Origin: Octopus sinensis
Taxonomy: Eukaryota
Reading direction: 5' to 3'
DNA: 64,000 bases
NCBI RefSeq assembly: GCF_006345805.1
Contig: NC_043022.1
Span: forward strand, 3,844,001 to 3,908,000
This document shows positions 10,845 to 64,000 of the stretch, in pieces. Position numbers and translations under genes: made by a program. The first letter of the stretch is position 1, and each line of letters starts with the position of its first letter. A model generated the notes under the pieces. It saw nothing but the letters and a program-made list of their open reading frames with translations, was not told the DNA's origin and ran no database searches.

Positions 10845-11057
10845 CGAAATACAGTAGTAACAGAACACATGACTACAACCAATCTGATGTGGGTTGTGAG
10901 GAACGAGATCACATATGGCACAATTGGTCAATTCTGCCATTGTCCGAGAGTCTGGAGAACTGGGTTGAGCTGGCGGCGGCTGAGGCAGAAGGTAGTATGT
11001 TAGGATACTTTTCATGCGACGGAAATTCACTAAGGGTAGAAGGAAGAATAAAAACTC
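10845..11057 (-). CDS. PEX2: PEX2 coding exon 7 (EFLFFLLPLVN...CAICDLVPHNPHQIGCSHVFCYYCIS), RING N-terminal part
   Basis: tttcag| acceptor, TCG|gtaagg donor, 213 nt; CxxC, CxH and CxxC of the C3HC4 RING. Confidence 0.96.
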
Positions 11058-31035: not shown

Positions 31036-31288
31036 TTATTGTATGGAAAGTGTTCTGCGTAGGATGCGTGCAGTGCCTAGTAGTGCAATTTTCTGTATGT
31101 TATATGTGTTTGTAAGTCCTGGTGTTTTTGTTATGTATTTGTCTGAATATTTTTTTATCTTGCCTAATGCACCTATTATGATAGGAATTGTTTCTGTTTT
31201 TAGATTCCACATTCTGGTTACCTCTATTTCCAGGTCTTTGTATTTTGAAAGTTTCTCCATTTCTTTTAGAGACACATTGTCATCTGCT

Positions 31289-31319
<31 letters not shown>

Positions 31320-31440
31320 CATCATTATTGTTGTTGTTATTTTTGTGTATTGACGATAAATCATTAAAAGTTGATGGAATTCTATTTTTTCTAAAAGTCA
31401 AACCATTTAACAGAGAAAAACGATGTCTGACCCAGTCGTA
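31036..31440 (-). mobile_element. R4/Dong-like non-LTR retrotransposon 3' end (restriction-like endonuclease domain)
   Basis: KYKDLEIEVTRMW...IPIIIGALG...IQKIALLGTARILRR; interrupted by an (AAT/AAC)n tract. Confidence 0.8.
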
Positions 31441-32199
31441 AAAAGGCATGTGGCCTGTTTGTTGGTGCAGCTGATCAATAACTGAACACTACAACTGCAT
31501 TAATAAAAATTGATTTCTTTCGTTGATTCGGTACAAAATACTAAAAGACTGGCTGAGTGCACCAGTCAGTTGAATTAAGAACCAAGTGCGGATGAATATA
31601 AAACTAAAACAAGACGAGAACTGAACTCAGGGTGTAGAAATTGATGAGACCAAACACTGATCTGAATAATTAAATTCATTTCTAATGATGAAAAGAAAAT
31701 ATGCTTCAATATTAGTTTGGTCTCTCAAGTTTTGAGTTCAAACCCAAATGGAGTAAAAAGATATATCATTGTATCTGGGGAGAGTCATTCTCTTTTAGTG
31801 CCTTATTATTTAACACACTCACTGATTTGATTTCCACTCATTTACTTATTTATTTTTACTAAAATTTCCACTTATTCTTTGTAAGTGTTGTGTGGAAGTC
31901 GAACACCCCTATTGTTTGGCTTCTAATGGACTGTGCCACAATATAAATGGACGTACGCAGAGAGCTTTCAGAACAGTGTAAAAGCCGAGAGTTGCGTACT
32001 GTCGAGGATAATTACTGGTATCTTGAGTAGAAAGATTTGCAAAGAGATTATTATTATTATTATCCCGTTATATCGTTCGTCGAATATGCGATACAACAGT
32101 AAGCCTAGTATTTATTCTATTAATCTCTTTTGCTGAACCACAAAGTTACAGGGACGTAAACACAGCAACCTCAGTTGTTAAGAAATGGTGGGGGAACAA

Positions 32200-46253: not shown

Positions 46254-46648
46254 GGGCTGTGTGGTAAGTAGCTTGCTAACCAACCACATGGTTCCGGGTT
46301 CGGTCCCACTGCGTGGCATCTTGGGCAAGTGTCTTCTGCTATAGCCCTGGGCTGACCAATGCCTTGTGAGTGGATTTGGTAGACGGAAACTGAAAGAAGC
46401 CTGTCGTATATATATATATATATATGTGTGTGTTTGTGTGTCTGTGTTTGTCTCCCTAGTACTGCTTGACAACCGATGCTGGTGTGCTTATGTCCCCGTC
46501 ACTTAGCGGATCGGCAAAAGAGACCGATAGAATAAGTACTGGGCTTACAAAGAATAAGTCCCGGGGTCGATTTGCTCGACTAAAGGTGGTGCTCCAGCAT
46601 GGCCACAGTCAAATGACTGAAACAAGTAAAAGAGTAAAGAGCAAAAGA
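46254..46648 (+). mobile_element. SINE family A
   Basis: Near-consensus copy, slightly 5'-clipped. Confidence 0.9.
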
Positions 46649-47107
46649 GTATAACAAAATCAAGTGCAGGAGACACACACTTGTGTAGGTATGCCAGTGT
46701 CAAGTCTGTTGGAGAAATTGTTGTAAAAAGCAAGTTTGTGGCCATCTGTTAGAGACCTTATCAGTTTACATCCAGAAAACAGAATCTGCTATTTTTACTT
46801 TAGACCCAACCCTGGCCAACTCCAATTATATTGCGGGCCACTTTAATCACTGAAAGTTTTTTTGAAGGCCACTTGTATACTTTATGCACTAATAGTCAAA
46901 TACTAAAATTACAGAATCAAGAATTTGTTTAAAATTATAAAATTGTAGGTTATTTGCTTCATTGCCACTTATAAATTTTAAATTTATTTTGAAACAAATG
47001 TTTTATACAAACAATTTTATTCAAACTTTAAATAAACCCATTTCAAGAAAGTATCAAGCGGGCCGCAAGATAAAAGTCTGCGGGTCGCAGGCCTCAGGCT
47101 GGCCAGC

Positions 47108-47541
47108 ACTCTCTCTCTCTTTTACTCTTTTACTTGTTTCAGTCATATGACTGCGGCCATGCTGGAGCACCGCCTTTAATCGAGTAACTCGACCCCGGGA
47201 CTTATTCTTTTGTAAGCCCAGTACTTATTCTATCGGTCTCTTTTGCCGAACCGCTAAGTAACGGGGACATAAACACACCAGCATCGGTTGTCAAGCAATG
47301 CTAGGGGGACAAACACACACACATATATATACTTTGATACTTTGATAGGTTTCGGCCATTATTGGCCCAGGCCATGTCTAACTTAATAGCACCACCTGGA
47401 CTTCTTTCAGTTTCCGTCTACGAAATCCACTCACAAGGCTTTGGTCGGCCCGAGGCTATAGTAGAAGACACTTGCCTAAGGTGCCACACAGTGGGACTGA
47501 AGCCGGAACCGTGTGGTTGGTAAACAAGCTACTTACCACCC
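47108..47541 (-). mobile_element. SINE family A with foreign insert in its microsatellite
   Basis: Reverse copy; 47330-47402 is non-SINE sequence also seen at 19888-19962. Confidence 0.88.
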
Positions 47542-48780
47542 AGCCACTCCTAGACTCTTAAATACATTTTTGCTCGGCTTTAATTTCAAGTCTAGTTGAA
47601 GAAAGACAGACTTGACCCACATTTCTTATAAAAATAGAGAAAAAAATTATGAATTCTTTTTATCTCAGTCATTAGATTGAAGCCATGCTGGAGCGCTACC
47701 TTGAAAACCCAGTGCTTATTCTTTTAAACTTGGTTCTTATTCGGTTTGTCTCTTTTGCTGAACTGCTAAGTTATGGGGATGTAAACACACCAACAGTAGT
47801 TGTGAAGCGGTGGTGGGGAACAAACACAAGGCGCACACACATCTATATATATACACAACAGGCTTCTTTCAGTTTCCGTCTACCAAATCCAGTCACAAGA
47901 TTTTGGGTCAGCCTGAGGCTATAGTAGAAGACACTTGCCCAAGCTACTACGTAGTGGAACTGAACCCACAACCATGTGGTTGGGAAGCAAACTTCTGACC
48001 ACACAGCCACGCCTAAATAAATAAATTGAGATAAAATAAAATAATAATGGCTTCAAATTTTAGTTCAGAGTCAGGAGTTTTTGAGGGGAGGGGTTAAGTC
48101 GATTACATCGACCCCAGTTCTCAACAGGTAATTGACCCTGAAAGGATGAACAAACGAGTTGACCTCAGCGGAATTTGAACTCAAAACGTAAAGGCGGATG
48201 AAATGCCGCTAAGCATTTTGTCCGGCGTGCTAACGATTCTGTCAGCTCGCCGCCTTGATGATGGTGATGATAATAATAATAAAACGCGATGGTAACGATT
48301 GGAACGACTGTAGCTATAGGTCTGCTCTGTGAGAACCGAACTAACGTTAAACAACAACAACAACGAAAGTGTTAGATTTCCGCCACCAAAAAAACTTCAA
48401 AACCTGATTTAAAGAATATAATTCTTCATAATAACGGTCTTTAGAAATAAGTTTTATTTTTAAAAAATAAAATTGTCGTTAATTTCGAAAACTGACTTTT
48501 TTGGCACCGAAAAGGGTTTGTTGAGGGTTTAAAACTTAGAGAGGGAACCACTTCTTGAGGTACAACCTACGCCAGCTTGACAAAGAAATAATAATAATTA
48601 ATTAACTACCTTTTCTTTAGTTGTTACAGTCATCGGACTGCGGCCATGCTGGGGCCACCACCTTGAAGGGGTTTCAGTCAAACGAAACGACCCCAAGACT
48701 TATGTGTTGTTCTTGATTTTTTTTTTTAAAGCCTGGTACTTATTCTCTGGGTACCTCATACTGAACCGCTAAGTCACGCG

Positions 48781-49683: not shown

Positions 49684-49719
49684 CTGGGCGATCCTTAAGG
49701 CGTCGACAGGTCTTGCCAT
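49684..49719 (-). CDS. PEX2: PEX2 coding exon 1 (MARPVDALRIAQ)
   Basis: ATG in acgATGg context; ends CAG|gtaaga; matches the LR(I/V)xQ motif that precedes LDA; lies in a CpG-richer patch. Confidence 0.9.
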
Positions 49720-50199: not shown

Positions 50200-50267
<68 letters not shown>

Positions 50268-50274
50268 ATATATA

Positions 50275-50672
50275 TACTCTTTTACTTGTTTCAGTCATTT
50301 GACTGCGGCCATGTTGGAGCACCGCCTTTAATCAGGCAACTCGACCCCGGGACTTATTCTTTTGTAAGCCCAGTACTTATTCTATCGGTCTCTTTTGAGA
50401 CCGCTAAGTAACGGGGACATAAACACACCAGCATCGGTTGTCAAGCAATGCTAGGGGGACAAACACAGACACACAAACATATACACACACACACATATAT
50501 ATATATACATATATACGACGGGCTTCTTTCAGTTTCCGTCTACCAAATCCACTCACAAGGCCTTGGTCGGCCTGAGGCTATAGTAGAAGACACTTGCTCA
50601 AGGTGCCACACAGTGGGACTGAACCCGGAACCATGTGGTTGGTAAACAAGTTCCTTACCACACAGCCACTCC

Positions 50673-50704
<32 letters not shown>

Positions 50705-51135
50705 TTGAGAAAAAGAAAAGAGAGAGAGAGAGAGAGAGGCACAGGAGTGGGTGTGTGGTAGCAAGTTTGCTTCCTAACCACACGGTTCCGGATTCAATCC
50801 CACCATGTGGCACCTTGGGCAAGTATCTTCTACTATAGCCTCAGGCGAATAAAAGCCTTGATAATGGATTTGGTAGGCAGAAACTGAAAGAAGCCTGTCG
50901 TATATATGTATGTGCGTGTGTCTGTGTTTGTCCCACTACCACCACTTGACAACCGGTGCTGGTGTGTTTATGTCCCCACAACTTAGTGGTTCGGCAAAAA
51001 GAGGCCAATAGAATAAGGATTAGGCTTACAAAGAATAAGTCCTAGGTTCAAATTGTTTGACTAAAACCCCTTAAGGTGATGCTCCAGCATGGCTGCAGTC
51101 AAAATGACTGAAACAAGAAAAGGAATAAAAGAGTA
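50275..51135. mobile_element. Two head-to-head SINE family A copies upstream of PEX2
   Basis: 50275-50671 (-) and 50739-51135 (+). Confidence 0.85.
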
Positions 51136-52267
51136 AAAGAATATATATATATCATTATCATCATCATCGTCATTTAACGGCCACTTTCCATGCTGGCATG
51201 GGTGGAACGGTTTGACTGAAGTCTGGAGAGCCAGTGGCTGCACCAGGCTCAATTTTATCTGGCAAGGATGCCCTTCCTAATGCCAACCATTCTGAAAGTG
51301 TAGTGGGTACTTTTTACATGCCACCGGCATGGGAGCCAATCAGGCAGTACTGGCATCGACCATGCATGAATTGTGCTTTTTACATGCCACCGGCACGGGT
51401 GCCAGTCAAGTGGTACTGTCATCAGCCACAACAATGACTTCACTTGACTCAACAGATCTTCACAAGTGCAGTTTACTGCCCGATGATTGAAGGGAGCCCT
51501 TAAATGGGCTGGTTGTGCTGCACTGGCTTAGGCCACAGTTACGGTCTCACTTGGCTCACAGAGATAATGATTGAGACCTTTGGCATTGTGTCGTGCTTGA
51601 GAAGAAGACCCTTCAAGCCAAGCAAAATCAGTCATGGCAGATACCAGTGTCACACGAATGGTACCCATGCCAGTGGCACATAAAAGCACCCATTACACAC
51701 TAAGAGTGGTTAGTTTTAGGAAGGGCATCTAGCCAGTGAAACCATGCCAAAACAGACTGGAGTCTGGTGCAGCCCCTCAGCTTTCCAATGATGGTCAAAC
51801 TGAACGTTAAATGATGATGATGATGATGATTCAAAGGTCTTCTTTCAGTTTCTGTCTACCAAATCCACTCACAAGGTTTTGCTAAACCCAAGGCTATAGT
51901 AGAAGATACTTGCCCGATCTGGAACCAAGTGGTTGGTAAAGAAACATCTTACCACACAGCCATGCTTCTGTCTATATATTGGTGAATTATGCAATCATTC
52001 TGATGTCTGTGGCAAGAGAGAATCTAAATTTTGGTACTGTCTTCCGCTGGCTAAGTCCACCTATAGACTGACCCAGAATACACCTGCTTTCAAAATCAGA
52101 CAACTCTTCTTTCTGGTGTTCATGGCATGACTAGTTGCTATAAACAATTTTTTATAAAGCGATCTTTTGCCACTGTTGCATCTGTCTTTTGACAACAGTT
52201 GTCACTCTGACAAATATTGTTATCTTACAAAGTTGTTGACAGAATGGTTTTATCAAGCATTGTGCAA

Positions 52268-52860
52268 GATCGCGATTAAATATGGTTTCTGATTATAAAT
52301 ATCTTGGGTCATACATATCATCATCAGGAAAAGACTTTCTAACTAGAAAGGGTATGGCCTGGTCAGCCTGTAATGACATGCATAAGATCTGGTCATCAAA
52401 TCTAAGTAGAGACTTCATACTTGAAATCTTCAAAGCCACAGTCGAACCAATTCTACTATATGGCTCAGAAACCTGGACGTTATCAAAGAAGCTTGAGAGG
52501 CGGTTGGATGGAACCTACACTCACCTCCTTCTGAGAGCTCAAAATCTCTCGTGGAAGAGTCATTCAACCATGCAAATATATGGGAAACTACCACCTGTGT
52601 CATCTCTTGTGAAAGGTAGGAGAGTCCAGTTTGCTGGACATTGTTGTAGAGCTGAAAAAGAAGTAATTTCTACTCTTCTCCTCTGGAAGCCATCTACTCG
52701 CAATACCAGAGGGCGCACACTCTCCTACCCTGATGTAATCTCCAGGGATACAGGCATCCAGCAACAGGACCTCCATAATGCCATGATGGACCGTGAAGTC
52801 TGGCATAGCATGGTAAATTCCATTGTCTCGACCACGGTCGAACAATGATGAATGATGATG
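52268..52860 (+). mobile_element. 5'-truncated RTE-clade LINE (RT C-terminus) with 13-bp TSD
   Basis: ORF 52282-52848: YKYLGS, LLYGSETWTL, FAGH, RGR..DR..W motifs; TGA-repeat tail; AAGCATTGTGCAA at 52255-52267 and 52861-52873. Confidence 0.92.
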
Positions 52861-53520
52861 AAGCATTGTGCAACCCTCAGTCGTACAATGTCATTACCCT
52901 CAAAGGGCTGGATCATGATAATATCCACTCAGGATCACAGTATAATTACTATATCAGCACAGACATGACTAGCAACACAATCTACATGTACTCTCAACCT
53001 TCCTCCTGTTGACCAGGCTACTGGTGTATTTATAGTGGCTGGGTCCTACCACTTTTTACCAGGTGGTGTATACAGTTTCTCTATACAACACAATTAATAT
53101 ACTGTAATCTGCAAAAACAATACATTAACAAGTTTGAAGCACATTGTAGTGACCACACAGATAAAACAGTATAAATAGGTGGGGGTGTATTTACTTTTGA
53201 GATGTCTGTATGTGAAGAGGGGGTTATACCTATATCTGTCTATCTAGCAAGCTAGCTATCTACACACACACACACAAAACACTTTGTAAGGTGGTTGGTG
53301 TTAGGAAGTGCATCCAACTGTAAAAACCCTGCCAGAACAGTGAAGTTTGGTGCAGTCTTCTGCTCAGTCAGCTCCTATCAAACCGTCCAACCCATGCCAG
53401 CATGGAAAATGGACGTTAAATGATGATGATGATGATGATATATTTATATATTCAACCATAGTTATTTATTATCACATTTCTTCAATGAGTATCTCCCTTT
53501 AGGGACATAAATACCACTGT

Positions 53521-54559
53521 CATGTCATGTCATGTCATGTCCTGTCATGTCATGTCATGTCATGTCCTGTCATGTCATGTCCTGTCATGTCATGTCATGT
53601 CCTGTCATGTCCTGTCCTGTCATGTCATGTCATGTCCTGTCCTGTCATGTCATGTCATGTCATGTCATGTGTCCTGTCATGTCCTGTCATGTCATGTCAT
53701 GTCCTGTCCTGTCTGTCATGCCATGTCATGTCCTGTCATGTCCTGTCATGTCCTGTCATGTCCTGTCATGTCATGTCATGTCCTGTCATGTCATGTCATG
53801 TCCTGTCATGTCCTGTCATGTCATGTCATGTCCTGTCTGTCCTGTCCTGTCCTGTCATGTCATGTCATGTCCTGTCCTGTCATGCCATGTCATGTCATGT
53901 CATGTCCTGTCATGTCCTGTCATGTCCTGTCATGTCATGTCATGTCATGTCCTGTCATGTCATGTCCTGTCATGTCCTGTCCTGTCATGTCATGTCATGT
54001 CCTGTCATGTCCTGTCATGTCATGTCCTGTCCTGTCATGTCCTGTCATGTCATGTCATGTCCTGTCCTGTCATGTCCTGTCATGTCATGTCATGTCCTGT
54101 CCTGTCCTGTCATGCCATGTCATGTCCTGTCATGTCCTGTCATGTCCTGTCATGTCCTGTCATGTCATGTCCTGTCATGTCATGTCCTGTCATGTCCTGT
54201 CATGTCATGTCATGTCCTGTCATGTCATGTCCTGTCATGTCCTGTCATGTCATGTCATGTCCTGTCCTGTCATGTCATGTCATGTCATGTCCTGTCCTGT
54301 CCTGTATGTCATGCCATGTCATGTCCTGTCATGTCATGTCATGTCCTGTCATGTCATGTCATGTCCTGTCATGTCCTGTCATGTCATGTCATGTCCTGTC
54401 ATGTCATGTCATGTCCTGTCATGTCCTGTCATGTCATGTCATGTCATGTCCTGTCCTGACCTGTCATGCCATGTCATGTCCTGTCATGTCCTGTCATGTC
54501 CTGTCATGTCCTGTCATGTCCTGTCCTGTCATGTCATGTCCTGTCATGTCATTTCATGT
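53521..54559 (+). repeat. (CATGT/CCTGT)n pentanucleotide satellite, about 1 kb
   Basis: About 205 pentamers, nearly all CATGT or CCTGT. Confidence 0.97.
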
Positions 54560-54879: not shown

Positions 54880-55290
54880 AGCTGAGACAAGAGACGAGCT
54901 GTGAGAAATCGTGTCTGACAAACGGTGACCACACCTGCTCACCGTCTAGGAAGCTCTGGAGATGTCGCAGCCTCAGCGCATGTCCGCACATCAGCAGCCA
55001 CTGCAAACCCGGCCCTCCATTCAGTGAGTGTTGACAGCGAAAAGAGCACCTGACAAGTGGAACACGTTCCTTCCACAGAAAGCAGAAGCACGCGAGCTCC
55101 AGTTTGGTCCGATATGGATGGGTAAGGCACGACGGTCAGGTGATAATATATGACGGAGACGATGTGTGCATTTGTCACTTTGCCAGACCCTTCAGGGATA
55201 GCTTTGTCTAAACCCTTTCTTCGTGACATTGATCTCCATGCTCGTCACCTATTCTCAGTTCTTCTCCAGCTGAAGATCTGGACCAAACCA
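54880..55290 (+). mobile_element. Possible degraded LINE ORF2 C-terminal fragment
   Basis: GC-richer coding-like remnant with ETMCAFVTLP, loosely like Tx1 ET..HA...CP; no intact frame. Confidence 0.3.
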
Positions 55291-55491
55291 GACACTGTTT
55301 TTTTCTTTTTTTCTTTTTCCTTTTTTTTCCCACATTTTCCTCTGTCTTCCCTTTTTCTGTCACATGACTTTGTAAATAAACAATCTGGTGTGTTTATTTT
55401 AATGACCTACCAAGGAATACAGTGAGTTTCTTTGCACTAGGTGTTGGGAAGCCACTCAGCAAGAAATGGGAAACCAAATTGAAAGAAGAAA

Positions 55492-55564
<73 letters not shown>

Positions 55565-56367
55565 GAAATAGTAAGAGAAAAATTAACCATTTGCTCTCAA
55601 TGGATAACTTGAAGCTTTTTTATTAAAAGTGAAAGAGATTTATTCATTAATACAGACTGTAAGACTCTTCAGAAAAAATACAAGCAAGGAAATTGGCACA
55701 GATAGTTGCGTAATATTAGTCACGAGAAGGGGACAGGTAGTCAACATGAAGGCATCCAATTACCAGATGACCAGACATTAAAATCAGTGAAAGAAGGAGA
55801 GAGTTATAAGTATGTAGGAGTATTAGAATCTGACAGAGTACTAACTACAGAAATGAAAGCGAAAATTGAGAAGGAGTAGATCAGAGGAGTGAGGAAGCTA
55901 AGTCAAAGATAATGGCCCAACCTCGTGAGGCTGTAAATATTTGGGAAGTATCATTACTTTTATGACTGGCAGCTTTTGTAGATTGGACGACAACAACAAC
56001 ACAACAACAACAGCGATAAATGATTAATTCATACTTTATTTAGCTGCTAATTACCTTATGTCTTCATTATTTGTTAAGATTTAATTTCTGTTGTGAGACT
56101 GTGGTTAGGTAAAAAAAAGAAAAAAAGCTGTGTGTGTAGCTCGATGTGATAATGTCTGAATAAGTCTGTGTGTGTGTGCATGTGTGTGGTGTTTGCGTAT
56201 GTTTGGTGTGTGTGTGTGTGTGGTGTGTGGTGTGTGTGTGTGGTGTGTGTGTGATGTGTGTGTGTGTGTGTTGTGTGTGGTGTGTGTGTGTGTGTGCTGG
56301 AAGATATGAATGAAAGCAAATAAAGTGAGACAAAGCTCGAAGCTTTCTCTCGATTCCTCATCCGAAA

Positions 56368-56586
56368 TTAAGATTGTGGTTTCTTTTTCTTTTTTTCTTT
56401 CTTTCCTTTCTTCTTTCTGCTATCTTCACTACATTCATCTTCATCACTCGCGCTCAAACTTTGTTCGCTTACACTTTCTTCTCCGCTCACACTTCCTTCT
56501 ATGATCACACTTTTTTGTATGATCACACTTTCTTCTTCGCTGTCGTCTTTTCCTGCAGCTGCGTATTCGGCTGCCTTGCTCGTCAT
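56368..56586 (-). CDS. Terminal exon of unrecognised gene (MTSKAAEYAAAGKDDSEEES...SDEDECSEDSRKKKGKKEKKKKKPQS*)
   Basis: Acceptor tctctctctttttatttatttcag|; in frame with the 59342 exon (phase 0); acidic tract then Lys-rich tail; AATAAA at 56035-56040 downstream. Confidence 0.6.
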   Translation of the reverse strand: MTSKAAEYAAAGKDDSEEESVIIQKSVIIEGSVSGEESVSEQSLSASDEDECSEDSRKKKGKKEKKKKKPQS

Positions 56587-57161
56587 CTGAAATAAATAAA
56601 AAGAGAGAGAATCAACAATCTCTAAAGGGGAAACTTTGAATTATTCTCCCTTCCCCTATGAAGATAGAAAGCTACTATACAGGTTACGTGTATTATATAA
56701 TCCCTTGGTACCGTATGAATTGACAGGCCCCTGTTGACAGGCCACTGACATTTAAGGTACTAACACATACAATATGCGAATTAGCAGCCACAGATTTCTG
56801 CAATTACTGTAACTAATGAGTATATAAATAGATTTCCTTGTGATTAGTCATAATGATGTAGACTCCTCTGATGAGACTACAGTAATCTTCTAAAAGCGAT
56901 TAGTGTTTTCCATTAATCTTTTTTTCTTTAATCTACTGAAAGACAGCTAATCTAGACCCGTTTATATATCAACTGCGTAAATTACATATTCTTCTGCTTT
57001 CAGTCATTTGACTGCGGCCAGGCAGGAGCACAACCTTCAGTCGAACAAATCGACTCCAGGACTTATTCCTTGTAGCCTAGTCTTTCTGTCGGTCCCTGTT
57101 GCCGAACCCCTAAGTTACGGGGACATAAACACACCAACTTCGGTTGTCAAACGATGGTGGA

Positions 57162-57211
<50 letters not shown>

Positions 57212-58229
57212 CATATATATGTATGCGACGGGATTCTTTCAGTTTCCGTCTACCAAATCCACTCACAAGACTTTGGTCAGCCCAAGGCTATAGTAGAACA
57301 CACTTTCCCAAGGTGCCGCGCAGTTGGACTGAACCCGGGACCACGAGGTAGTAAGTAAGCTTCTTGCCACACACCCACTCCTGTGCCTATAATGTATGTA
57401 CTTGTCTCAGGATGATCTCAGGATTATCCTGTTGATAATTTTAATAATTTTTAAAGTCTAAACAAAGCAAGTTAAGACATTAAACCTACAGGTTGATGGT
57501 TAGTTCTATTATCTGGTATTTCAACATTTTAGGGTCAGAACCTGTTCTTCTGGGAATCTACAGAGAAAAGTTGTTGATAAATGATGTTTCTGCTTTGTAG
57601 TGTGTGTATGAATGGCAGTTTTCTCTAAAGTGTTTTGTTTAAATCGGATATGTTTTAAATATGCGAGCTACACTTGTCAATTAAAACAGCTTCTTTTATC
57701 CTTAAGTTCCCATTATTTCTTTCTGTAGATTCAGTGGCAACTTTGACGTCTTGGGTGCAGCATTTGCACAATTTTTTTTTCTTTTGACAGAAGAAGCGTT
57801 AGCATAGAAATGTTCTTGGATCTTTTCGGCAGTTTTTTCTAGCTGTGTCATATGAAATTGTCACCCATAATTATGACCCTAGTATCAATCTATTGCATTT
57901 CAATCTGTTTTAGAGTTAGGGTTAGGGGTTGGGGGAAGGATATTTTTTTTCTTCAGAAATGTAAATAAACCCAATCTGTTTCTTAAACGAGGGACATATT
58001 CATACAGCACGGAATATTTTCACCTCAATAGATGTCATTGATTGGTTGAAATTGCAGAAATTGAAGAAAAAAATCATATATCTTACAAACTATAGAATTT
58101 TCTCAATAAAGCCAAGAGAAAAAGATGTTTTATAAACACATTCTACCAGTATACGAAGTTTAAGAGTGTTTAGTTACTTGGAAATTATTTTTAAAAACTG
58201 CCATTCAAACCGAAAAGATCCATGTTCTT

Positions 58230-59110
58230 TAATGCTTATGAGAACCTTCATATTTCACGTTGAAGAATTGGTCGAGGGCCAATCTCTCTGCGAACACTTC
58301 GGTTGCGATGCCTTTTCTAAAAGCCTCATCTAACTTCCTCACTAGATCTACTTTTACTCTGTTTCTTTCAACTGCAAGTCCCTTGCAAGTCTGTTCTGAT
58401 GGTCCTTTTCAGGGTGAACCACTATTTATAGTTGACGATTGCCTCTGTCAACGGCTTAACTAATTCACTAATCCGGTCTCTGAAATCTTTGTGCACAGAC
58501 GAAGGCGCGTTCAGCTTCCGGTAACCGGATCCATGTCTATGAAGCCTAAGTGGCTCGTTGTGGTCTATGTAGTTGACTATTTTCAATTGTAGAAAACCAT
58601 ACTATCCGTATCTGAAGGATACCCTATCGCAATACGATCTGCATGATCCGATGTGGTTTAACCAGCTCTACACTGGCACATAAAGGAAATTCAGTCGATA
58701 CCTGTCAGACAGTTGGAATCATTTGGGCAAGTTTGCGGGGCTTTCTTCACCCTCCTCCCCTATCTGCTAGCCTACAAAGTCCCCACCAATGTCTAAAATC
58801 CATTCTAATCTTCCACTAATACTAAGGAGTGGAACATTCCCAGAAAGTTCCAGATGCCTGAAGAAATCTGGTCCTCCTGCTCCAATCGGGGCATAGACAG
58901 CAACTATGCCCTTCGATGTCAGTCGCGATCAGTACCACCGACTTACTTTCTGGATCCAGGAGAACATCCGTATTGCAAGATCCAGATTTTTCCGAACCAT
59001 CATGGCGACTCTGCCTCCCGGACGACTTAGAGATGCTAACACCGAGAGCATCGATGATGGATGAATGTGCATCCAGGCTCAGCAGTTGAGTAGGACAACA
59101 GAATAAAAGA
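58230..59110 (-). mobile_element. Degraded L1/Tx1-clade LINE (AP-endonuclease region)
   Basis: Minus-strand pieces DPESKSVVL, AVYAP..PDFFRHLE, IVNYIDH, GSGYRKLNA..KDFRDRI..WFTLKRTIR resemble Tx1/L1 ORF2; many stops and frameshifts. Confidence 0.65.
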
Positions 59111-59341
59111 ACACCCAAGTGTGGGTACGATCCGTTTCGAGTGGGGCCAAGCAGTGTCCGTCCACTCAACATCATTGGAAGTAGACAGATACTCATGTTG
59201 TAAAGGGATCAGAATAATGGAGACTGAAATAACCGTGATTTCTAATCGTACTTCTGCAGCAGACGGAAATATCTACACCTTATTCCGTATTGTAACTATC
59301 ACAGATTATACAGCAAAACAACAACTGAAATAAACACTTAC

Positions 59342-59442
59342 ACTTGCGGCTACCTTTGAACCATGGTGTGCTACTGCACCTGCAGCAGGCTTGACAGCTT
59401 CAAAAGCAACGCGTGCAGCTCGAAGCATATTCAAAACTTCAC
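59342..59442 (-). CDS. Exon of unrecognised small gene (EVLNMLRAARVAFEAVKPAAGAVAHHGSKVAAS)
   Basis: Strong acceptor ttttttctcttctttcag| and consensus donor |gtaagt; only one frame is both stop-free and joins the 56586 exon in frame; ATG at 59428; unique GC-richer sequence among repeats. Confidence 0.65.
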
Positions 59443-60624
59443 CTGAAAGAAGAGAAAAAATAGCGTGAATAGTAATTTCTTAGAAGCAGAGTGTATGATA
59501 TGTATATGAATTGACTATTATATAAATAAATTGATTAATCCGTGTATGTATTCTCCATTTTCTTTTTTGTATTGTAATAAATTTTTTTCCCTCCAATAAA
59601 GAAAAGGTGAAAACATCTATAACGGCAACTGGAATTCCGGATCTTTTCCTTTGAACGGCACATGTCAACACAATTTCTAGTTAACTAAATACTTTTAAAC
59701 TTCGTATACTTGTAGAATGTTTATAAAACATCATTTTTTCTTGGCTTTCTTGAGAAAATTCTCTATGTTGTAACATATTTCCACTTTAATTTCAAGCATT
59801 TCGGCAATTTTAACCAATCGCTGACCTCCTTTTGGGGTGAAAACATTCTGTGCTGTATGAATATGTCCCTCGTTTAAGAAACAGATTGGGTTTATTTACA
59901 TTTGCAAAGAAAAAAAATACCCTTTCCCCACCCCTAACCCTAACCCTAACCCTAACCCAAAAAGAGATTGAAATGCAATAGATTGATACTAGGGTTATAA
60001 TTATGGGTGACATTTTCATTTGACACCGCTAGAAAAAAATCCCATTTTCGTTGCGGTGTCGTATAAAATTGTCACCCATAATTATAACCCTAGTATTGAT
60101 CTATTGCATTTCAATCTATTTTAGATTTAGGGTTAGAGTTAGGGTTAGGGTAAGGGTTAGGGTGAGGGGTGGGGGAAGGGTATCTTTTTTTCTTCGCAAA
60201 TGTAAATAAACCCAATCTGTTTCTTAAACGAGGGACATATTCATACAGCAAGGAATCTTTTCACCCCAAATGGAGGTCAGCGATTGGTTAAAATTGCCAA
60301 AATGCTTGAAATTAAAGTGGAAATATGTTACAACATAGAGAATTTCCTCAAGAAAGCCAAGAAAATATGATCTCTTATTATAAAAGGCAGATTCTATCTG
60401 CCTCCCTTTGTCAGTTATAGAAATCTACAATATAGGATTTCTTCAATTACAATTTACCTAGCATTTTTAAGAGTAGAATGCATCGGTTTTGCCAGGTCCC
60501 ACTTTTTAAAATTTCAACCCCAATTAAGCAAATTTACAGAAAACTCACATTCTGGTTATGAGTCAAATGCTTCTCTTACTGTGGTTTACACCACACGCAA
60601 ACGCACACACAGTGTGCAACGAAG

Positions 60625-61040
60625 AAAATGAAGTAATTCACTTTCTGTAGTGAGTGACTCTTTCACTCTGCCTCCCACTTCCTCTTTACACACATTGACA
60701 CGCAAATATATAAATAAAATTGTCAGCTAACATGCGTGTGTGTGTGTGTGTGTGCGTGTGTGTGTGTGTGAGGGTGCGTGTGTGTGTGTGTGTGTGCGTG
60801 TGCGTGAGTGTCTGACAGGAAAAATGAAAGTAATTCACTTTCTGTAGTGAGTGACTCATTCACTCTGCCTCCCACTTCCTCTTTACACACATATACACGC
60901 AAATATATAAATAAAATTGTCAGCTAACGTGCGTGTGTGTGAGTGTGTGTGTATGTGTGTGTGTGTGTGTGTGTGTGCGTGTGTGTGTGTGAGGGTGCGT
61001 GTGTGTGTGTGCGTGCGTGTGCGTGAGTGTGTGACAGGAA
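60625..61040 (+). repeat. About 200-bp tandem duplication
   Basis: aagtaattcactttctgtagtgagtgactc...gtcagctaac..gacaggaaa occurs twice. Confidence 0.88.
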
Positions 61041-61418
61041 AGTTTTTTAGGACGAATATAAGACCTATATCCAAGTAGCAGAAAGATCGCCCGAAAGTGT
61101 ATATAGATATTTAAATGTATTTATATATTCATCTATAGACAGATGTATGTATAATGTGTGTGTATATATTTCTGGTGTACCTGTATTTCAAAGGGCCAGC
61201 CTTGTCACACTCTGTGTTATGCTGAATCTCACAGAGAACTATGTTAAGCGTACACATGTCTGTGGAGTGCTCAGCCACTTGCCCGTTAATTTCACGAGTA
61301 GGCTGTTTCGTTGATCGGATCATCCTCGCAATTTCAGCTGATTAATCTTGAGATTGTCCCTTTTTGTATCACCAAGTTGTCTGGATGTTTTGCGCTCTTG
61401 TTCCATTTTGTATTTTAT

Positions 61419-61450
<32 letters not shown>

Positions 61451-62182
61451 GCGACCACTAAATTTTGTACGACTTTTTCAACCTTTTCCCGCTTCATTCT
61501 TTCTTTCTCCCCCCTCTCTCACACATTTCTTTCCCTTTCTTACTCATTTTTCGCTTTACTATGTCCCTGTCTCTCTTTTTCTCTCGCCACTCCTTGATTC
61601 TTCTGTCTATCTGCTTCTACAACTCTCTCTCACTCTCGCTCTCTCTTCTCCCCCTCATAATTTTGTTCCTCTTTTTCTCTCTCTTCTCTTCTCACGTAAC
61701 CTATAGGCCAGACTGCTAGCCCTTTTGCGTCTGACCATGGTCACTGCCACATCGATATTCTTCCCTCTGCTGTAAGGCTTCATTTCCACACATGCCAGCT
61801 GAATTCAATTTGTTCCCAGTCGAAAGACACCTGTTGTTATGTCCTGTTATTATTATCATTATTGTTATTTTTATTGTATTTTTGTATTTTTATTCGTGTA
61901 AAATCGTCTGTTTTTCCGTCCTTGTTTTCGTATACATTTCATTCTTTTTTCCAAGGAATCTCTTAGCTTAGTTTTTCCTTGGGGCTAGCCAGATTGGAGG
62001 AATCTCAATTTTAATCAGCCGAAATTGCGAGGCTGATCTGTTTCTTGACTGAGGATAAAAAGCTTCAAATGACCTGTCCTTGTTTTTTTTGTATCGCCTA
62101 TCTGGATGTTTTGTTGTCCCTTTTTGTATTACCTAGTTATCCGAATATTTTTGCATTCTTGTCCTATTTTATATTTTATTTG

Positions 62183-62213
<31 letters not shown>

Positions 62214-62934
62214 TCCTTCTTCTCTCTTCTCTCTCTCTTTGTTGCGTTTGTCCCTCCTCTCTCTCCTCTCTCTCCTCTCTCTCTCTCTCCGTTGCTTCTC
62301 TTTCTTTTCTTTCTCTCTTCTCGTCACGTGACTGCTGCCGAAATCTGCCTTTCAGCTTCTGACCAGCGTCGTGTTAACATCGTTTGTTTTTCGTCCGCCG
62401 CTATAGGCATCGCCGATGAAGGCTCCTTTCCTTGCGCCAGAGAAAGAATGTTTTTGCTTGTTATCAGTCGTAAGACACTTGTTGTTGTTTTTCACCGTTA
62501 ATGCTTCTGTATTTCATGTTTCTGTATTCCATTTATTTTTTTGTTTTATATTCGTCCCTTTTGCTATCCTGGTGTCCGTATGCATTCGATCGTTCTTCCA
62601 GGAAATCTACGCTCCCAGCTTAGTTTTTCTAATGCTCGTTGCTTAGTTTTCTTGGAGGGCTGGCCGTGATCTAGTAATCTCAAGATTAATCAGCCGAAAT
62701 TACTACGATGATCCGGTTCTTGACTGAAGACTGAGGGTTTCGAATGTCCTGTCCGTGTTTATTGTATCGTCTTCTAAGAGTTATACGTTCTTGTCCATGT
62801 TGTATTTTTCTACATACCTTAATATATATATATATATATATATAAAGGGAAAGTTGACGAAAATAAACAAAAGACGAAGGCAGGTTGAGTACAAACAAAC
62901 AAATGTATTAGTATAGTGCTCAGGAATAGAAAAG

Positions 62935-62972
62935 TCTTTTACGTTTCAAGCCTATGCTCTTCGACAGAAAGA
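62935..62972 (-). ncRNA. Minimal type-I hammerhead ribozyme-like motif (Penelope-type)
   Basis: UCUUU-CUGUCGA-A-GAGC(AUAG)GCUU-GAAA-C-GUA|AAAGA: 5-bp stem I, 4-bp stem II, palindromic ACGU stem III; core A6 is replaced by U. Confidence 0.55.
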
Positions 62973-63142
62973 TACACAGAAAAAAACAAGGAGAGAAAAA
63001 AATGCGTGTAGTAGTTAACGATAGCGGCAACATACACTTTGTTTTTATATATATTTTTTAATCCAACGGGAAAACAAAAAAAAAACAACAATGGAACAAT
63101 ACAGTATTATATTAATAGGCGCTCAGGAAATGGAAGCAGGAA

Positions 63143-63180
63143 GGTATGACGTTTCGAGCGGAGCTCTTCGTCGGAAATAA
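63143..63180 (-). ncRNA. Minimal hammerhead-like motif (Penelope-type), second copy
   Basis: CCGACGA-A-GAGC(UCC)GCUC-GAAA-C-GUC; perfect stem II and GUC cleavage triplet; U4 is replaced by C and stem I is weak. Confidence 0.5.
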
Positions 63181-64000
63181 AGAAGGAAAGAGAGGAAGAG
63201 AGAGGAAAGAAAGATCCCAAAGCGGGCAACAGGGTAGAGAAAAAAAACGACTGGTTGTTACGAGTTACACATGGTGAAAGGCGGAATAGTTTACGATAAC
63301 AAGAGCAAAGTAGGTTTTTAAGGGCCAAAAGAGTGGAGACAGGTTGGTAACGCAACAGTGTGTGTTATGTGTGAGTGTGTGCGTGTGCGTGTGTGTATGT
63401 GTGTGTGTGAGGCGAGATAAAAAACAAAAAAAATATGTATGTGTTAGTGTGTGCGTCTGTGTGTAGGCGTGTGAGGTAGGGCGAGACAGTGGTAGGCATA
63501 GCAGAAAGTGGTCAGTAGTAAGAAAAAGAAGGAAGGAGGAGGGAGGGGAAGGGGTGGGGGCGTATGTAGCGTGCCAGCGTGTGTTGAGTAGTAGTGTGTT
63601 GTGTGGTTGTCCAGGTTGTGTAGTATTAATGGCGAGTAGATTGAATGTGTGTAAGAGTAATATATATTTAAGCAATGTGTGTATATGTGGCGCGTGTGGT
63701 AACAAAAAGGAGGTGGTTAAGGAAAAGGACTCCAGCTGAGGGGAAGATGGAAGAGTGGTCCCGCGGAGAAGGGCGTGGGAAAACCCAACGACAAGCGACG
63801 GTCCCAGGAACGAGCGGGAGGTCTCGTCGGGTCCAAGAGCGAGGTGCATGCGGCGCGTATGCGTGCGCGAACCGGCGCAAGCGCGTGTGTGCGCGCGCCT
63901 GCGAGTATGCGCGTAAGTATGTATGTGTGTGGATGTGAGTGTGTCTGTGTGTATGTCTGGGTGTCCAGTTGTCCGAAGAATGTATGTGAGTATGTGTGTA

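What the first reader, a model, noticed from the sequence alone, without database searches (positions are those of the whole stretch)
56368..59442. Unrecognised gene whose last exon holds an overlapping Arg/Cys-rich protamine-like frame
Seen: two exons with strong splice signals join in frame to give MLRAARVAFEAVKPAAGAVAHHGSKVAAS-MTSKAAEYAAAGKDDSEEES...KKKGKKEKKKKKPQS* (101 aa from ATG 59428). The last exon has a second frame (56584-56444): DEQGSRIRSCRKRRQRRRKCDHTKKCDHRRKCERRRKCKRTKFERE*, with 23/46 R+K and 5 Cys, four of them spaced every 6 residues by an 18-nt repeat. Differences between repeat units are synonymous or conservative in this frame (cgg/cga, agg/aga, aaa/aag, K/R) but mostly radical in the acidic frame. 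A GAG acceptor 8 nt downstream (exon start 56578) would put the upstream exon in frame with the basic peptide. Known: cephalopods have Arg-rich and Cys-containing sperm nuclear proteins made as precursors, and the cuttlefish spermatid protein T leader (recalled as MKVAANTSK...) loosely resembles KVAASMTSK. Inference: a lineage-specific gene that could make an acidic or a protamine-like product by alternative 3' splicing, or whose true frame is the basic one.
Basis: partly seen in the sequence, partly recalled or inferred. Interest (0 to 1): 0.72.

Follow-up and report, generated by a model that had tools for sequence, protein, structure and literature searches.

The report
Fast-evolving orphan octopus gene, not protamine
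A small two-exon gene known only from the common-octopus species pair is probably real and its last exon has changed unusually fast, but the arginine/cysteine-rich "protamine-like" frame laid over it is a by-product of purine-rich repeats, not a conserved second protein.

Summary
The window is Octopus sinensis chromosome CM016884.1, 3844001-3908000 (100% identity).

The gene model is independently annotated at the syntenic place in O. vulgaris (CAI9741335.1, 73 aa). That model has the same first exon, the same acceptor and the same KKKKKPQS stop. It is the only relative found among 1.84 billion representative proteins.

In O. vulgaris the repeat array is absent, the basic frame is only 19 codons long, and the proposed GAG acceptor reads GGG. 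No AG there can join exon 1 to that frame. Codon composition alone gives 38% K+R in that frame. Once the tandem array is collapsed, the open stretch is unremarkable (P=0.16).

One thing was unexpected. The exon-2 coding sequence differs at 32 of 132-135 aligned bases (24%) between species whose local background divergence is about 1.9%. The difference starts at the first exon base, and all 23 changed codons are nonsynonymous in the acidic frame. I cannot tell whether positive selection or simple-sequence turnover caused this. No expression data could be reached.

The parts
59429..59442 (-). Short leader between an upstream acceptor-like site (ttttttctcttctttcag at 59443-59460) and the ATG. The frame is open across it, so an upstream non-coding or coding exon is possible.
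   Evidence: identical in O. vulgaris
59342..59428 (-). Coding exon 1, 29 codons (MLRAARVAFEAVKPAAGAVAHHGSKVAAS), with donor AGT|GTAAGT. It is 54% GC against 28-39% in the flanks.
   Evidence: 2 of 87 bases differ from O. vulgaris, both nonsynonymous (V7G, H21R)
56587..59341 (-). Intron of 2755 nt. It contains transposon debris: a SINE-like repeat at 56998-57388, a (GT)n run, and a LINE-like fragment around 58822-59196.
   Evidence: 40 of 2710 aligned bases (1.5%) differ from O. vulgaris
56368..56586 (-). Last coding exon read in the acidic frame, 72 codons plus TAA. It encodes an Ala-rich start, a Ser/Glu-rich repeat segment and a Lys-rich tail (KKKGKKEKKKKKPQS, 56371-56415).
56446..56535 (-). 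18-nt (6-codon) tandem array of five units. It reads EESVII/QKSVII/EGSVSG/EESVSE/QSLSAS in the acidic frame and RRKCDH/TKKCDH/RRKCER/RRKCKR/TKFERE in the +2 frame.
   Evidence: (TRF places it at 56466-56541)
56444..56527 (-). 84-nt in-frame segment present in O. sinensis and absent in O. vulgaris. It is essentially the repeat array. Its placement is ambiguous by a few bases.
56444..56584 (-). Arg/Lys/Cys-rich +2 frame (46 codons plus TGA). I read it as a compositional shadow of the acidic frame, not a product.
56579..56580 (-). The AG of the proposed alternative GAG acceptor, 8 nt inside the exon. O. vulgaris has GG at this position.

Best explanation
This is a taxonomically restricted (orphan) gene of the Octopus vulgaris/sinensis pair. 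It lies 6.6 kb upstream of PEX2 on the same strand and has two coding exons. It is translated in the acidic frame into a small, largely disordered protein.

The protein has three parts:
- a conserved Ala-rich basic N-terminal helix;
- a hypervariable acidic middle, which in O. sinensis has been lengthened by a 6-codon tandem repeat (EESV..);
- a conserved polylysine tail.

The Arg/Lys/Cys frame is what purine-rich GAA/AAG/AGT-GTG codons read as when shifted by two bases. It was extended to 46 codons only because one stop-free 18-nt unit was duplicated. It is not a second product.

Shown:
- the sequence anatomy;
- orthology and synteny with O. vulgaris;
- preservation of the acidic frame;
- non-conservation of the basic frame and of its acceptor;
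- divergence confined to the exon.

Inferred:
- that the gene is transcribed and translated;
- that the excess change reflects selection on the acidic-frame protein;
- the protein's function. From composition alone I guess a nuclear or chromatin-associated, or otherwise charge-driven, disordered protein, possibly reproductive given its rate of change.
For: - The window is 100% identical to O. sinensis CM016884.1.
- O. vulgaris CAI9741335.1 (P0001) sits at the syntenic place next to PEX2. It has the same exon 1, donor, acceptor and terminal KKKKKPQS*.
- The acidic frame is open in both species across 32 substitutions and an 84-nt indel. The +1 frame has stops in both. The +2 frame is 19 codons long in O. 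vulgaris.
- Divergence is 32 of 132-135 aligned bases in the exon-2 CDS, against 1.5% in the intron and 1.9% regionally (binomial P=7e-26). The first difference falls on the first exon base, 56586.
- All 23 differing codons are nonsynonymous in the acidic frame. dN is 0.374 and dS is 0.03, which equals background. Fisher P=0.014.
- Random placement of the same substitutions keeps the acidic frame open in only 13.5% of trials. It keeps the frame open together with at most one synonymous codon in 1.2%.
- Exon 1 stands out in GC content.
- AlphaFold predicts helices at residues 3-27 and no structure elsewhere (mean pLDDT 57).
- Composition explains the basic frame.
Against: - No transcript, junction or peptide evidence could be reached.
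- The GenBank loci of O. sinensis and O. bimaculoides list no protein-coding gene upstream of PEX2.
- The O. vulgaris model may be purely ab initio. That pipeline mixed Augustus/GeneMark predictions with RNA evidence (PMC10700109).
- With the mutation spectrum kept fixed, the absence of synonymous changes alone is not significant (P=0.086).
- Both exon-1 differences are nonsynonymous, so purifying selection is not demonstrated.
- Differences between repeat units do look milder in the basic frame. My test did not show this to be an automatic property of the genetic code.
- No outgroup is available to polarise the changes.
Confidence: 0.6

Rival explanations
1. There is no protein-coding gene here. 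The two 'exons' are either a spurious ab initio model or exons of a non-coding RNA. Exon 2 would then be an unstable purine-rich simple sequence whose several open frames, on both strands, mean nothing.
For: - No gene is called here in the O. sinensis or O. bimaculoides records.
- No homologue exists beyond one 'hypothetical predicted protein'.
- Three or more frames are open over the exon.
- Other tandem or simple repeats in the same 18 kb also show raised mismatch of 10-14%.
- Many changes move towards simple sequence: a GCGGCGGGCGGGGC run in O. vulgaris and a 40-nt pure purine tract in O. sinensis.
Against: - The burst of change starts exactly at the acceptor and ends before the stop of the acidic frame.
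- That frame alone stays open through 32 substitutions and an in-frame indel.
- Synonymous sites of that frame sit at the background rate.
- Splice signals are strong and conserved, and exon 1 has exon-like GC content.
Confidence: 0.3
2. The gene makes, by alternative 3' splicing at the GAG acceptor (exon start 56578), a protamine-like Arg/Cys-rich sperm protein in addition to the acidic protein.
For: - The AG at 56580-56579 gives the right phase, and the basic frame is open for 46 codons with regularly spaced Cys.
- Repeat-unit differences are synonymous or conservative in that frame, and this is not simply a property of the code.
- Cys-containing protamines made from precursors exist in octopods: Gimenez-Bonafe et al. 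2002, cited in PMC11607694 and PMC12216123.
- The 19-codon O. vulgaris version of the frame is also Arg-rich.
Against: - The acceptor is GGG in O. vulgaris, and no AG there reaches the frame productively.
- The array that makes up most of the peptide is absent in O. vulgaris.
- GAG is the weakest acceptor type (established splicing knowledge). It lies 8 nt behind an optimal pyrimidine-tract CAG.
- The composition misses the protamine criteria: 33% R, 15% acidic, pI 11.3-11.65.
- There is no homologue and no Pfam hit.
- Divergence continues at the same density 3' of the basic frame's stop, where only the acidic frame is open.
- Composition plus duplication explains the frame.
Confidence: 0.04
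3. The basic frame is the only true coding frame, and the acidic frame is the shadow.
For: In the 5' part of the exon, species differences give a lower apparent dN/dS in the basic frame (0.29/0.59) than in the acidic frame.
Against: - It needs the weak GAG acceptor, which is absent in O. vulgaris.
- It implies a synonymous rate of 0.59 against a neutral background of 0.02.
- The non-coding +1 frame shows an even lower apparent dN/dS (0.14), so the pattern is a mirror image of the acidic-frame pattern.
- It cannot explain the 14 changes downstream of its stop.
Confidence: 0.02
4. This rival concerns only the cause of the exon-2 divergence. It would not be positive selection. It would be replacement by gene conversion from an unseen paralogue, or an old allelic lineage, or repeat-driven (slippage) homogenisation under relaxed constraint.
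For: - The block has sharp edges.
- The composition is strongly directional: 15 sites are T in O. vulgaris but not in O. sinensis, against 3 the other way.
- Internal short repeats lie on both sides.
Against: - An old paralogue or allele should also differ at synonymous sites, and these are at background.
- No second copy of exon 1 or exon 2 exists in the 64-kb window or the 23-kb O. vulgaris locus.
- No paralogue is annotated anywhere.
- Slippage-driven homogenisation is not excluded.
Confidence: 0.35

Closest known systems
Octopus vulgaris hypothetical predicted protein CAI9741335.1 / UniProt A0AA36FJJ9 (73 aa)
   Same: It is the syntenic orthologue, lying next to PEX2 (CAI9741334.1). Exon 1 is identical apart from 2 residues. 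The donor, the acceptor and the C-terminal KKKKKPQS are the same.
   Different: The middle 44 residues differ at 23 codons, and the 28-residue repeat segment is missing. The O. vulgaris version carries ten hydrophobic residues (I, F, V, I, F, W, L, M, L, M) where O. sinensis has Ala or charged residues.
Cephalopod protamines and their precursors (the Eledone cirrhosa cysteine-rich protamine; cuttlefish and squid protamine precursors)
   Same: The +2 frame is basic, contains Cys and would follow an N-terminal leader. Only the overall charge and the presence of Cys are shared.
   Different: There are no long arginine clusters. The peptide is 33% R with 15% acidic residues and pI 11.3, against >=12 for protamines. 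There is no sequence similarity to anything. Expression is unknown.
Taxonomically restricted (orphan or de novo) genes encoding short, disordered, low-complexity proteins
   Same: It is short and low-complexity, predicted to be disordered, restricted to a young clade, evolving very fast and expanding by repeats.
   Different: De novo origin is not shown. No alignable non-genic orthologous sequence was recovered from O. bimaculoides. Transcription is untested.
Genes with a conserved leader exon and flanks but a hypervariable last-exon product (the architecture known from secreted peptide families of molluscs and amphibians, and from some reproductive proteins)
   Same: The pattern of conservation matches: intron, UTR and first exon differ by about 1.5-2%, while the coding part of the last exon differs by 24%.
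   Different: The N-terminus is not a signal peptide, because charged residues interrupt the hydrophobic stretch (judged from the sequence; no predictor was run). There is no cysteine framework and no gene family, so membership is not claimed.

Membership tests
Protamine / sperm nuclear basic protein | Arginine-cluster composition with very high pI (>=12), few or no acidic residues (PMC12216123) | tested here: not met
   The 46-aa peptide has 15 R (33%), 8 K and 7 D+E, with pI 11.28. The spliced alternative product has pI 11.65. The criterion is quoted.
Protamine / sperm nuclear basic protein | Sequence relationship to a known protamine or protamine-like family | tested here: not met
   No candidate shares words with the peptide among 5.8 billion clusters. 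There is no Pfam family at E<=10.
Protamine / sperm nuclear basic protein | The coding frame is reachable by splicing and kept in close relatives | tested here: not met
   In O. vulgaris the GAG acceptor is GGG, the frame is 19 codons long and the array is absent. The only in-phase AG there meets TGA at once.
Protamine / sperm nuclear basic protein | Spermatid-specific expression, presence in sperm chromatin, N-terminal processing | not testable with these tools
   No RNA-seq or proteomics access. The recalled leader resemblance KVAAS|MTSK is not conserved (KVAAS|AAGG in O. vulgaris).
Dual-coding (overlapping-frame) exon | The second frame is open longer than composition and repeat structure predict | tested here: not met
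   P=0.005 in naive shuffles, but P=0.16 after collapsing the tandem array. Composition alone predicts 38% K+R.
Dual-coding (overlapping-frame) exon | Substitution pattern shows constraint in both frames (depressed synonymous rate in the main frame) | tested here: inconclusive
   dS in the acidic frame is 0.03, equal to background, from only about 23 synonymous sites. The apparent dN/dS <1 in the basic frame is matched by the non-coding +1 frame. Repeat-unit differences are milder in the basic frame, but there are only about 8 variable columns.
Taxonomically restricted (orphan) gene | No detectable homologue outside a narrow clade | tested here: met
   Only P0001 (O. vulgaris) was found in the word-indexed search and in the exhaustive profile search of 1.84 billion representatives. 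An exon-1 sequence model finds nothing within 10 kb of O. bimaculoides PEX2.
Taxonomically restricted (orphan) gene | Evidence that it is a gene: conserved intron-exon structure and an ORF kept between species | tested here: met
   This rests on two species only.
Taxonomically restricted (orphan) gene | Transcription and translation | not testable with these tools
   The exact products are not in the protein collection. The collection appears to hold no transcript-derived O. vulgaris or O. sinensis proteins: the PEX2 cluster has only NCBI members. Absence is therefore uninformative.
Gene under positive selection | dN significantly above dS and above the neutral (intron) rate | tested here: inconclusive
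   dN is 0.374 against dS 0.03 (Fisher P=0.014), and exon against background gives P=7e-26. A spectrum-preserving permutation gives only P=0.086 for the lack of synonymous changes. Simple-sequence turnover is an alternative. There is no outgroup and no polymorphism data.

The most novel reading that the evidence does not exclude
The gene is very young and restricted to the O. vulgaris species complex. Its last exon has been remodelled by extreme adaptive change (dN/dS about 12 within roughly 2.5 million years). In O. sinensis a fresh 18-nt repeat expansion, together with a new AG 8 nt inside the exon, has just created a splice-accessible Arg/Cys-rich open frame. That would be overprinting caught at birth, possibly yielding a nascent sperm-chromatin-type peptide.
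Probability: 0.06. Interest if true: 0.75.

Novelty: new member of a known kind. Interest (0 to 1): 0.33.

Why it matters
There are two lessons.

First, purine-rich acidic or serine-rich coding repeats automatically cast Arg/Lys/Cys-rich shadows in a shifted frame. Tandem duplication lengthens such shadows. A scan should therefore discount 'protamine-like' overlapping frames unless they survive in a relative.

Second, the underlying gene is not called as a protein-coding gene in the O. sinensis record. It is a candidate orphan gene whose last exon has diverged about 13-fold faster than its own intron between two species that split roughly 2.5 million years ago. If the gene is expressed, it becomes a compact test case: is fast change in disordered orphan proteins driven by selection (for example reproductive or species-recognition functions) or by simple-sequence mutation?

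Tried and rejected
- **Code-structure explanation.** I expected the genetic code itself to make changes in the AAR/AGR frame look conservative. Enumerating every single-base change in the array did not support this: mean BLOSUM62 is -0.6 in the basic frame and -0.22 in the acidic frame. I dropped the argument.
- **Outgroup.** I fetched the O. bimaculoides PEX2 locus (L003). Exact and degenerate patterns, BLAST of pasted parts and an exon-1 sequence model found only shared SINE-like repeats. The gene may be absent there or lie beyond the 10-kb flank. The L003 file never appeared in the scripting folder, so only about 3.7 kb of it was BLASTed.
- **Searches for the exact products** (101 aa, 73-aa alternative, 72-aa exon-2 ORF, unspliced exon-1 ORF): none is in the collection.
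- **Family and structure searches.** Pfam gave only sub-threshold low-complexity hits (SR-25, AP3D1, E>0.1). PDB gave nothing. Rfam gave nothing in 55000-64000. No tRNA genes were found.
- **AlphaFold** gave a low-confidence model, so I ran no fold search.
- **Second copy.** I searched for another copy of either exon in the window and in the O. vulgaris locus and found none.
- **Literature.** I found citations for Cys-rich octopod protamines but no open text with their sequences.
Full report
**Where the window comes from.** The window matches Octopus sinensis chromosome record CM016884.1 (assembly GCA_006345805.1) at 100% identity over window 1-59719. Window coordinate x corresponds to record position x + 3,844,000. 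The same region of O. vulgaris (OX597839.1, locus L001) aligns collinearly. There are 365 mismatches in 17,984 aligned bases, and the median 135-nt window differs by 0.7%. The two species are thought to have split about 2.5 million years ago (PMC10700109).

**Checking the observation.**
- The ATG is at 59428, followed by 29 codons to the donor AGT|GTAAGT.
- The intron is 2755 nt and ends in a long pyrimidine tract plus CAG.
- Exon 2 runs from 56586 to TAA at 56370-56368, giving the quoted 101-aa product.
- The +2 frame from 56584 gives the quoted 46-aa peptide: 15 R, 8 K and 5 C, four of the Cys six residues apart.
- Tandem Repeats Finder confirms an 18-nt array.
- An AG at 56580-56579 would put exon 1 in phase with the basic frame.

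**Is the gene model credible?** A search of 5.8 billion protein clusters with the 101-aa product found one relative: the O. vulgaris 'hypothetical predicted protein' CAI9741335.1 (73 aa). It lies at the syntenic position, 6.8 kb upstream of PEX2 on the same strand. It uses the same ATG exon, the same donor and the same acceptor, and it ends in the same KKKKKPQS-stop.

An exhaustive profile search of 1.84 billion representative proteins found nothing else. The gene is therefore an orphan, known only from this species pair.

Several points limit this support.
- The GenBank loci of O. sinensis and O. bimaculoides list no protein-coding gene upstream of PEX2.
- An exon-1 sequence model finds nothing within 10 kb of O. 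bimaculoides PEX2.
- The O. vulgaris annotation combined transcript, protein and ab initio evidence. The model may or may not have RNA support.
- I could reach no transcript data. The protein collection seems to contain no transcript-derived proteins of these two species, so their absence says nothing.

**The unexpected result.** Between the two species the intron differs at 40 of 2710 aligned bases (1.5%) and exon 1 at 2 of 87. The coding part of exon 2 differs at 32 of 132-135 aligned bases (24%) and also carries an 84-nt in-frame indel.
- The first difference is the first base of the exon (56586). The last (56397) lies 27 nt before the stop.
- No other 135-nt window in 18 kb exceeds 15%, and the runners-up are microsatellites.
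- In the acidic frame all 23 changed codons are nonsynonymous. dN is 0.374 and dS is 0.03, which equals background (Fisher P=0.014; exon against background P=7e-26).
- Ten hydrophobic residues in O. vulgaris are Ala or charged residues in O. sinensis.

There are caveats.
- A permutation that keeps the mutation spectrum gives P=0.086 for so few synonymous changes, P=0.135 for the frame staying open, and P=0.012 for both together.
- Many changes move towards simple sequence: a GCG/GGC run in O. vulgaris and a 40-nt purine tract in O. sinensis.

So either strong positive selection or repeat-driven turnover under weak constraint could be the cause. An old paralogue or allele is unlikely, because synonymous sites are not diverged and no second copy is seen.

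**Which frame?**
- The acidic frame is the only one open from the acceptor to a shared stop in both species.
- The +1 frame has stops in both.
- The basic +2 frame is open in both species up to the same TGA. In O. vulgaris it is only 19 codons long, because the repeat array is absent.
I checked every AG in the first 60 nt of that exon. All give the +1 frame except one, which lands directly on TGA.
- Species differences continue at the same density downstream of the basic frame's stop, with 14 in 72 nt, all nonsynonymous in the acidic frame.
- The apparently low dN/dS of the basic frame in the 5' part (0.5) is exceeded by the non-coding +1 frame (0.14). That shows it mirrors the acidic-frame pattern.

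**Why the basic frame looks as it does.** Exon 2 is 76% purine on the coding strand. Shifted by two bases, GAA-GAA-AGT-GTG reads AGA-AGA-AAG-TGT, that is R-R-K-C.
- Shuffling the order of the acidic-frame codons still gives 38% +/- 3.5% K+R in the +2 frame.
- The 46-codon open run is rare in naive shuffles (P=0.005). It is ordinary (P=0.16) once the five copies of one stop-free unit are counted once.
- Four of the five Cys are copies of one AGTGT.
- Two opposite-strand ORFs of 73 and 64 aa also span the exon.

Differences between repeat units are milder in the basic frame, and I could not show this to be a property of the code. It rests on about eight variable columns, so I give it little weight.

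**Comparison with protamines.** Octopod protamines with cysteine exist (Gimenez-Bonafe et al. 2002, cited in PMC11607694 and PMC12216123). That review characterises protamines by arginine clusters, pI >=12 and processing from precursors.
- The basic peptide has 33% R, 15% acidic residues and pI 11.3.
- It has no homologue and no Pfam match.
- The recalled similarity of KVAAS|MTSK to a cuttlefish leader could not be verified. It spans the splice junction in the acidic frame and is not conserved in O. vulgaris (KVAAS|AAGG).

Membership is therefore rejected on the three features I could test. Expression and presence in sperm chromatin remain untested.

**What the product would be.** The acidic-frame protein (pI 6.7 in O. 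sinensis, 8.6 in O. vulgaris) has three parts. The first is a basic Ala-rich N-terminus, predicted helical at residues 3-27. The second is an acidic Ser/Glu-rich disordered middle with many S-x-x-E/D sites. The third is a polylysine tail (mean pLDDT 57, so only the lack of a fold is meaningful). Pfam, PDB and Rfam give nothing. Function is inferred from composition only. I suggest a charge-driven disordered protein, possibly nuclear because of the polylysine end. The N-terminus also resembles a targeting helix. Its rate of change would fit a reproductive role, but nothing here shows that.

**Verdict.**
- The lineage-specific gene is plausible. I put about 0.6-0.7 on it being real and about 0.6 on translation in the acidic frame.
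- The protamine-like or dual-coding reading is not supported (about 0.04-0.06).
- The notable residue is an orphan gene, not called as a protein-coding gene in the O. sinensis record, whose last exon is by far the most diverged segment of the 18 kb compared.

Noticed in passing
window 5231-49719 (minus strand); RING-finger exon 10845-11057: Peroxisome biogenesis factor 2 (PEX2, XP_029651606.1, 302 aa) spans about 44 kb immediately downstream of the small gene on the same strand. Its first coding exon starts at 49719.
   Followed up: partly
window 53518-54559: A (TGTCA)n pentanucleotide array of about 209 copies, open in three frames as 'MSCHV' repeats. Mismatch against O. vulgaris is raised to about 10%.
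   Followed up: partly
window 56998-57388 (inside the intron), plus many copies elsewhere, e.g. 50255-51152, 46255-46653, 47117-47568: A SINE-like repeat of about 390 nt is present in at least 10 copies in the O. sinensis locus and also in O. vulgaris and O. bimaculoides. ARAGORN finds no intact tRNA head.
   Followed up: partly
window 56472-56477 (repeat unit 4): The repeat unit AAAGT|GTAAGC mimics the exon-1 donor (AGT|GTAAGT). It is a potential cryptic donor inside exon 2 that exists only in O. sinensis.
   Followed up: no
window 52282-52848 (+) and 31036-31449 (-): ORFs that look like tails of non-LTR retrotransposon reverse transcriptases (by eye). They are probably degraded mobile elements between and within the genes.
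   Followed up: no
window 59723-60378 versus 57833-58221: Inverted copies of one repeat flank exon 1. The same arrangement is seen in O. vulgaris (L001 9048-9790 and 11215-11605).
   Followed up: no
window 56167-56296: A (CA)n/(TG)n microsatellite of about 68 copies lies about 70 nt after the stop codon, inside the likely 3' UTR. The first AATAAA or ATTAAA motifs follow at 56085 and 56040.
   Followed up: no
L001 12819-12833 (O. vulgaris exon 2 start): Of the first 11 exon bases, five are A in O. sinensis and G in O. vulgaris, and one more is a T-to-C difference. Together they produce a GCGGCGGGCGGGGC run. This clustered A/G pattern is unexplained; simple-sequence spread is one idea.
   Followed up: no
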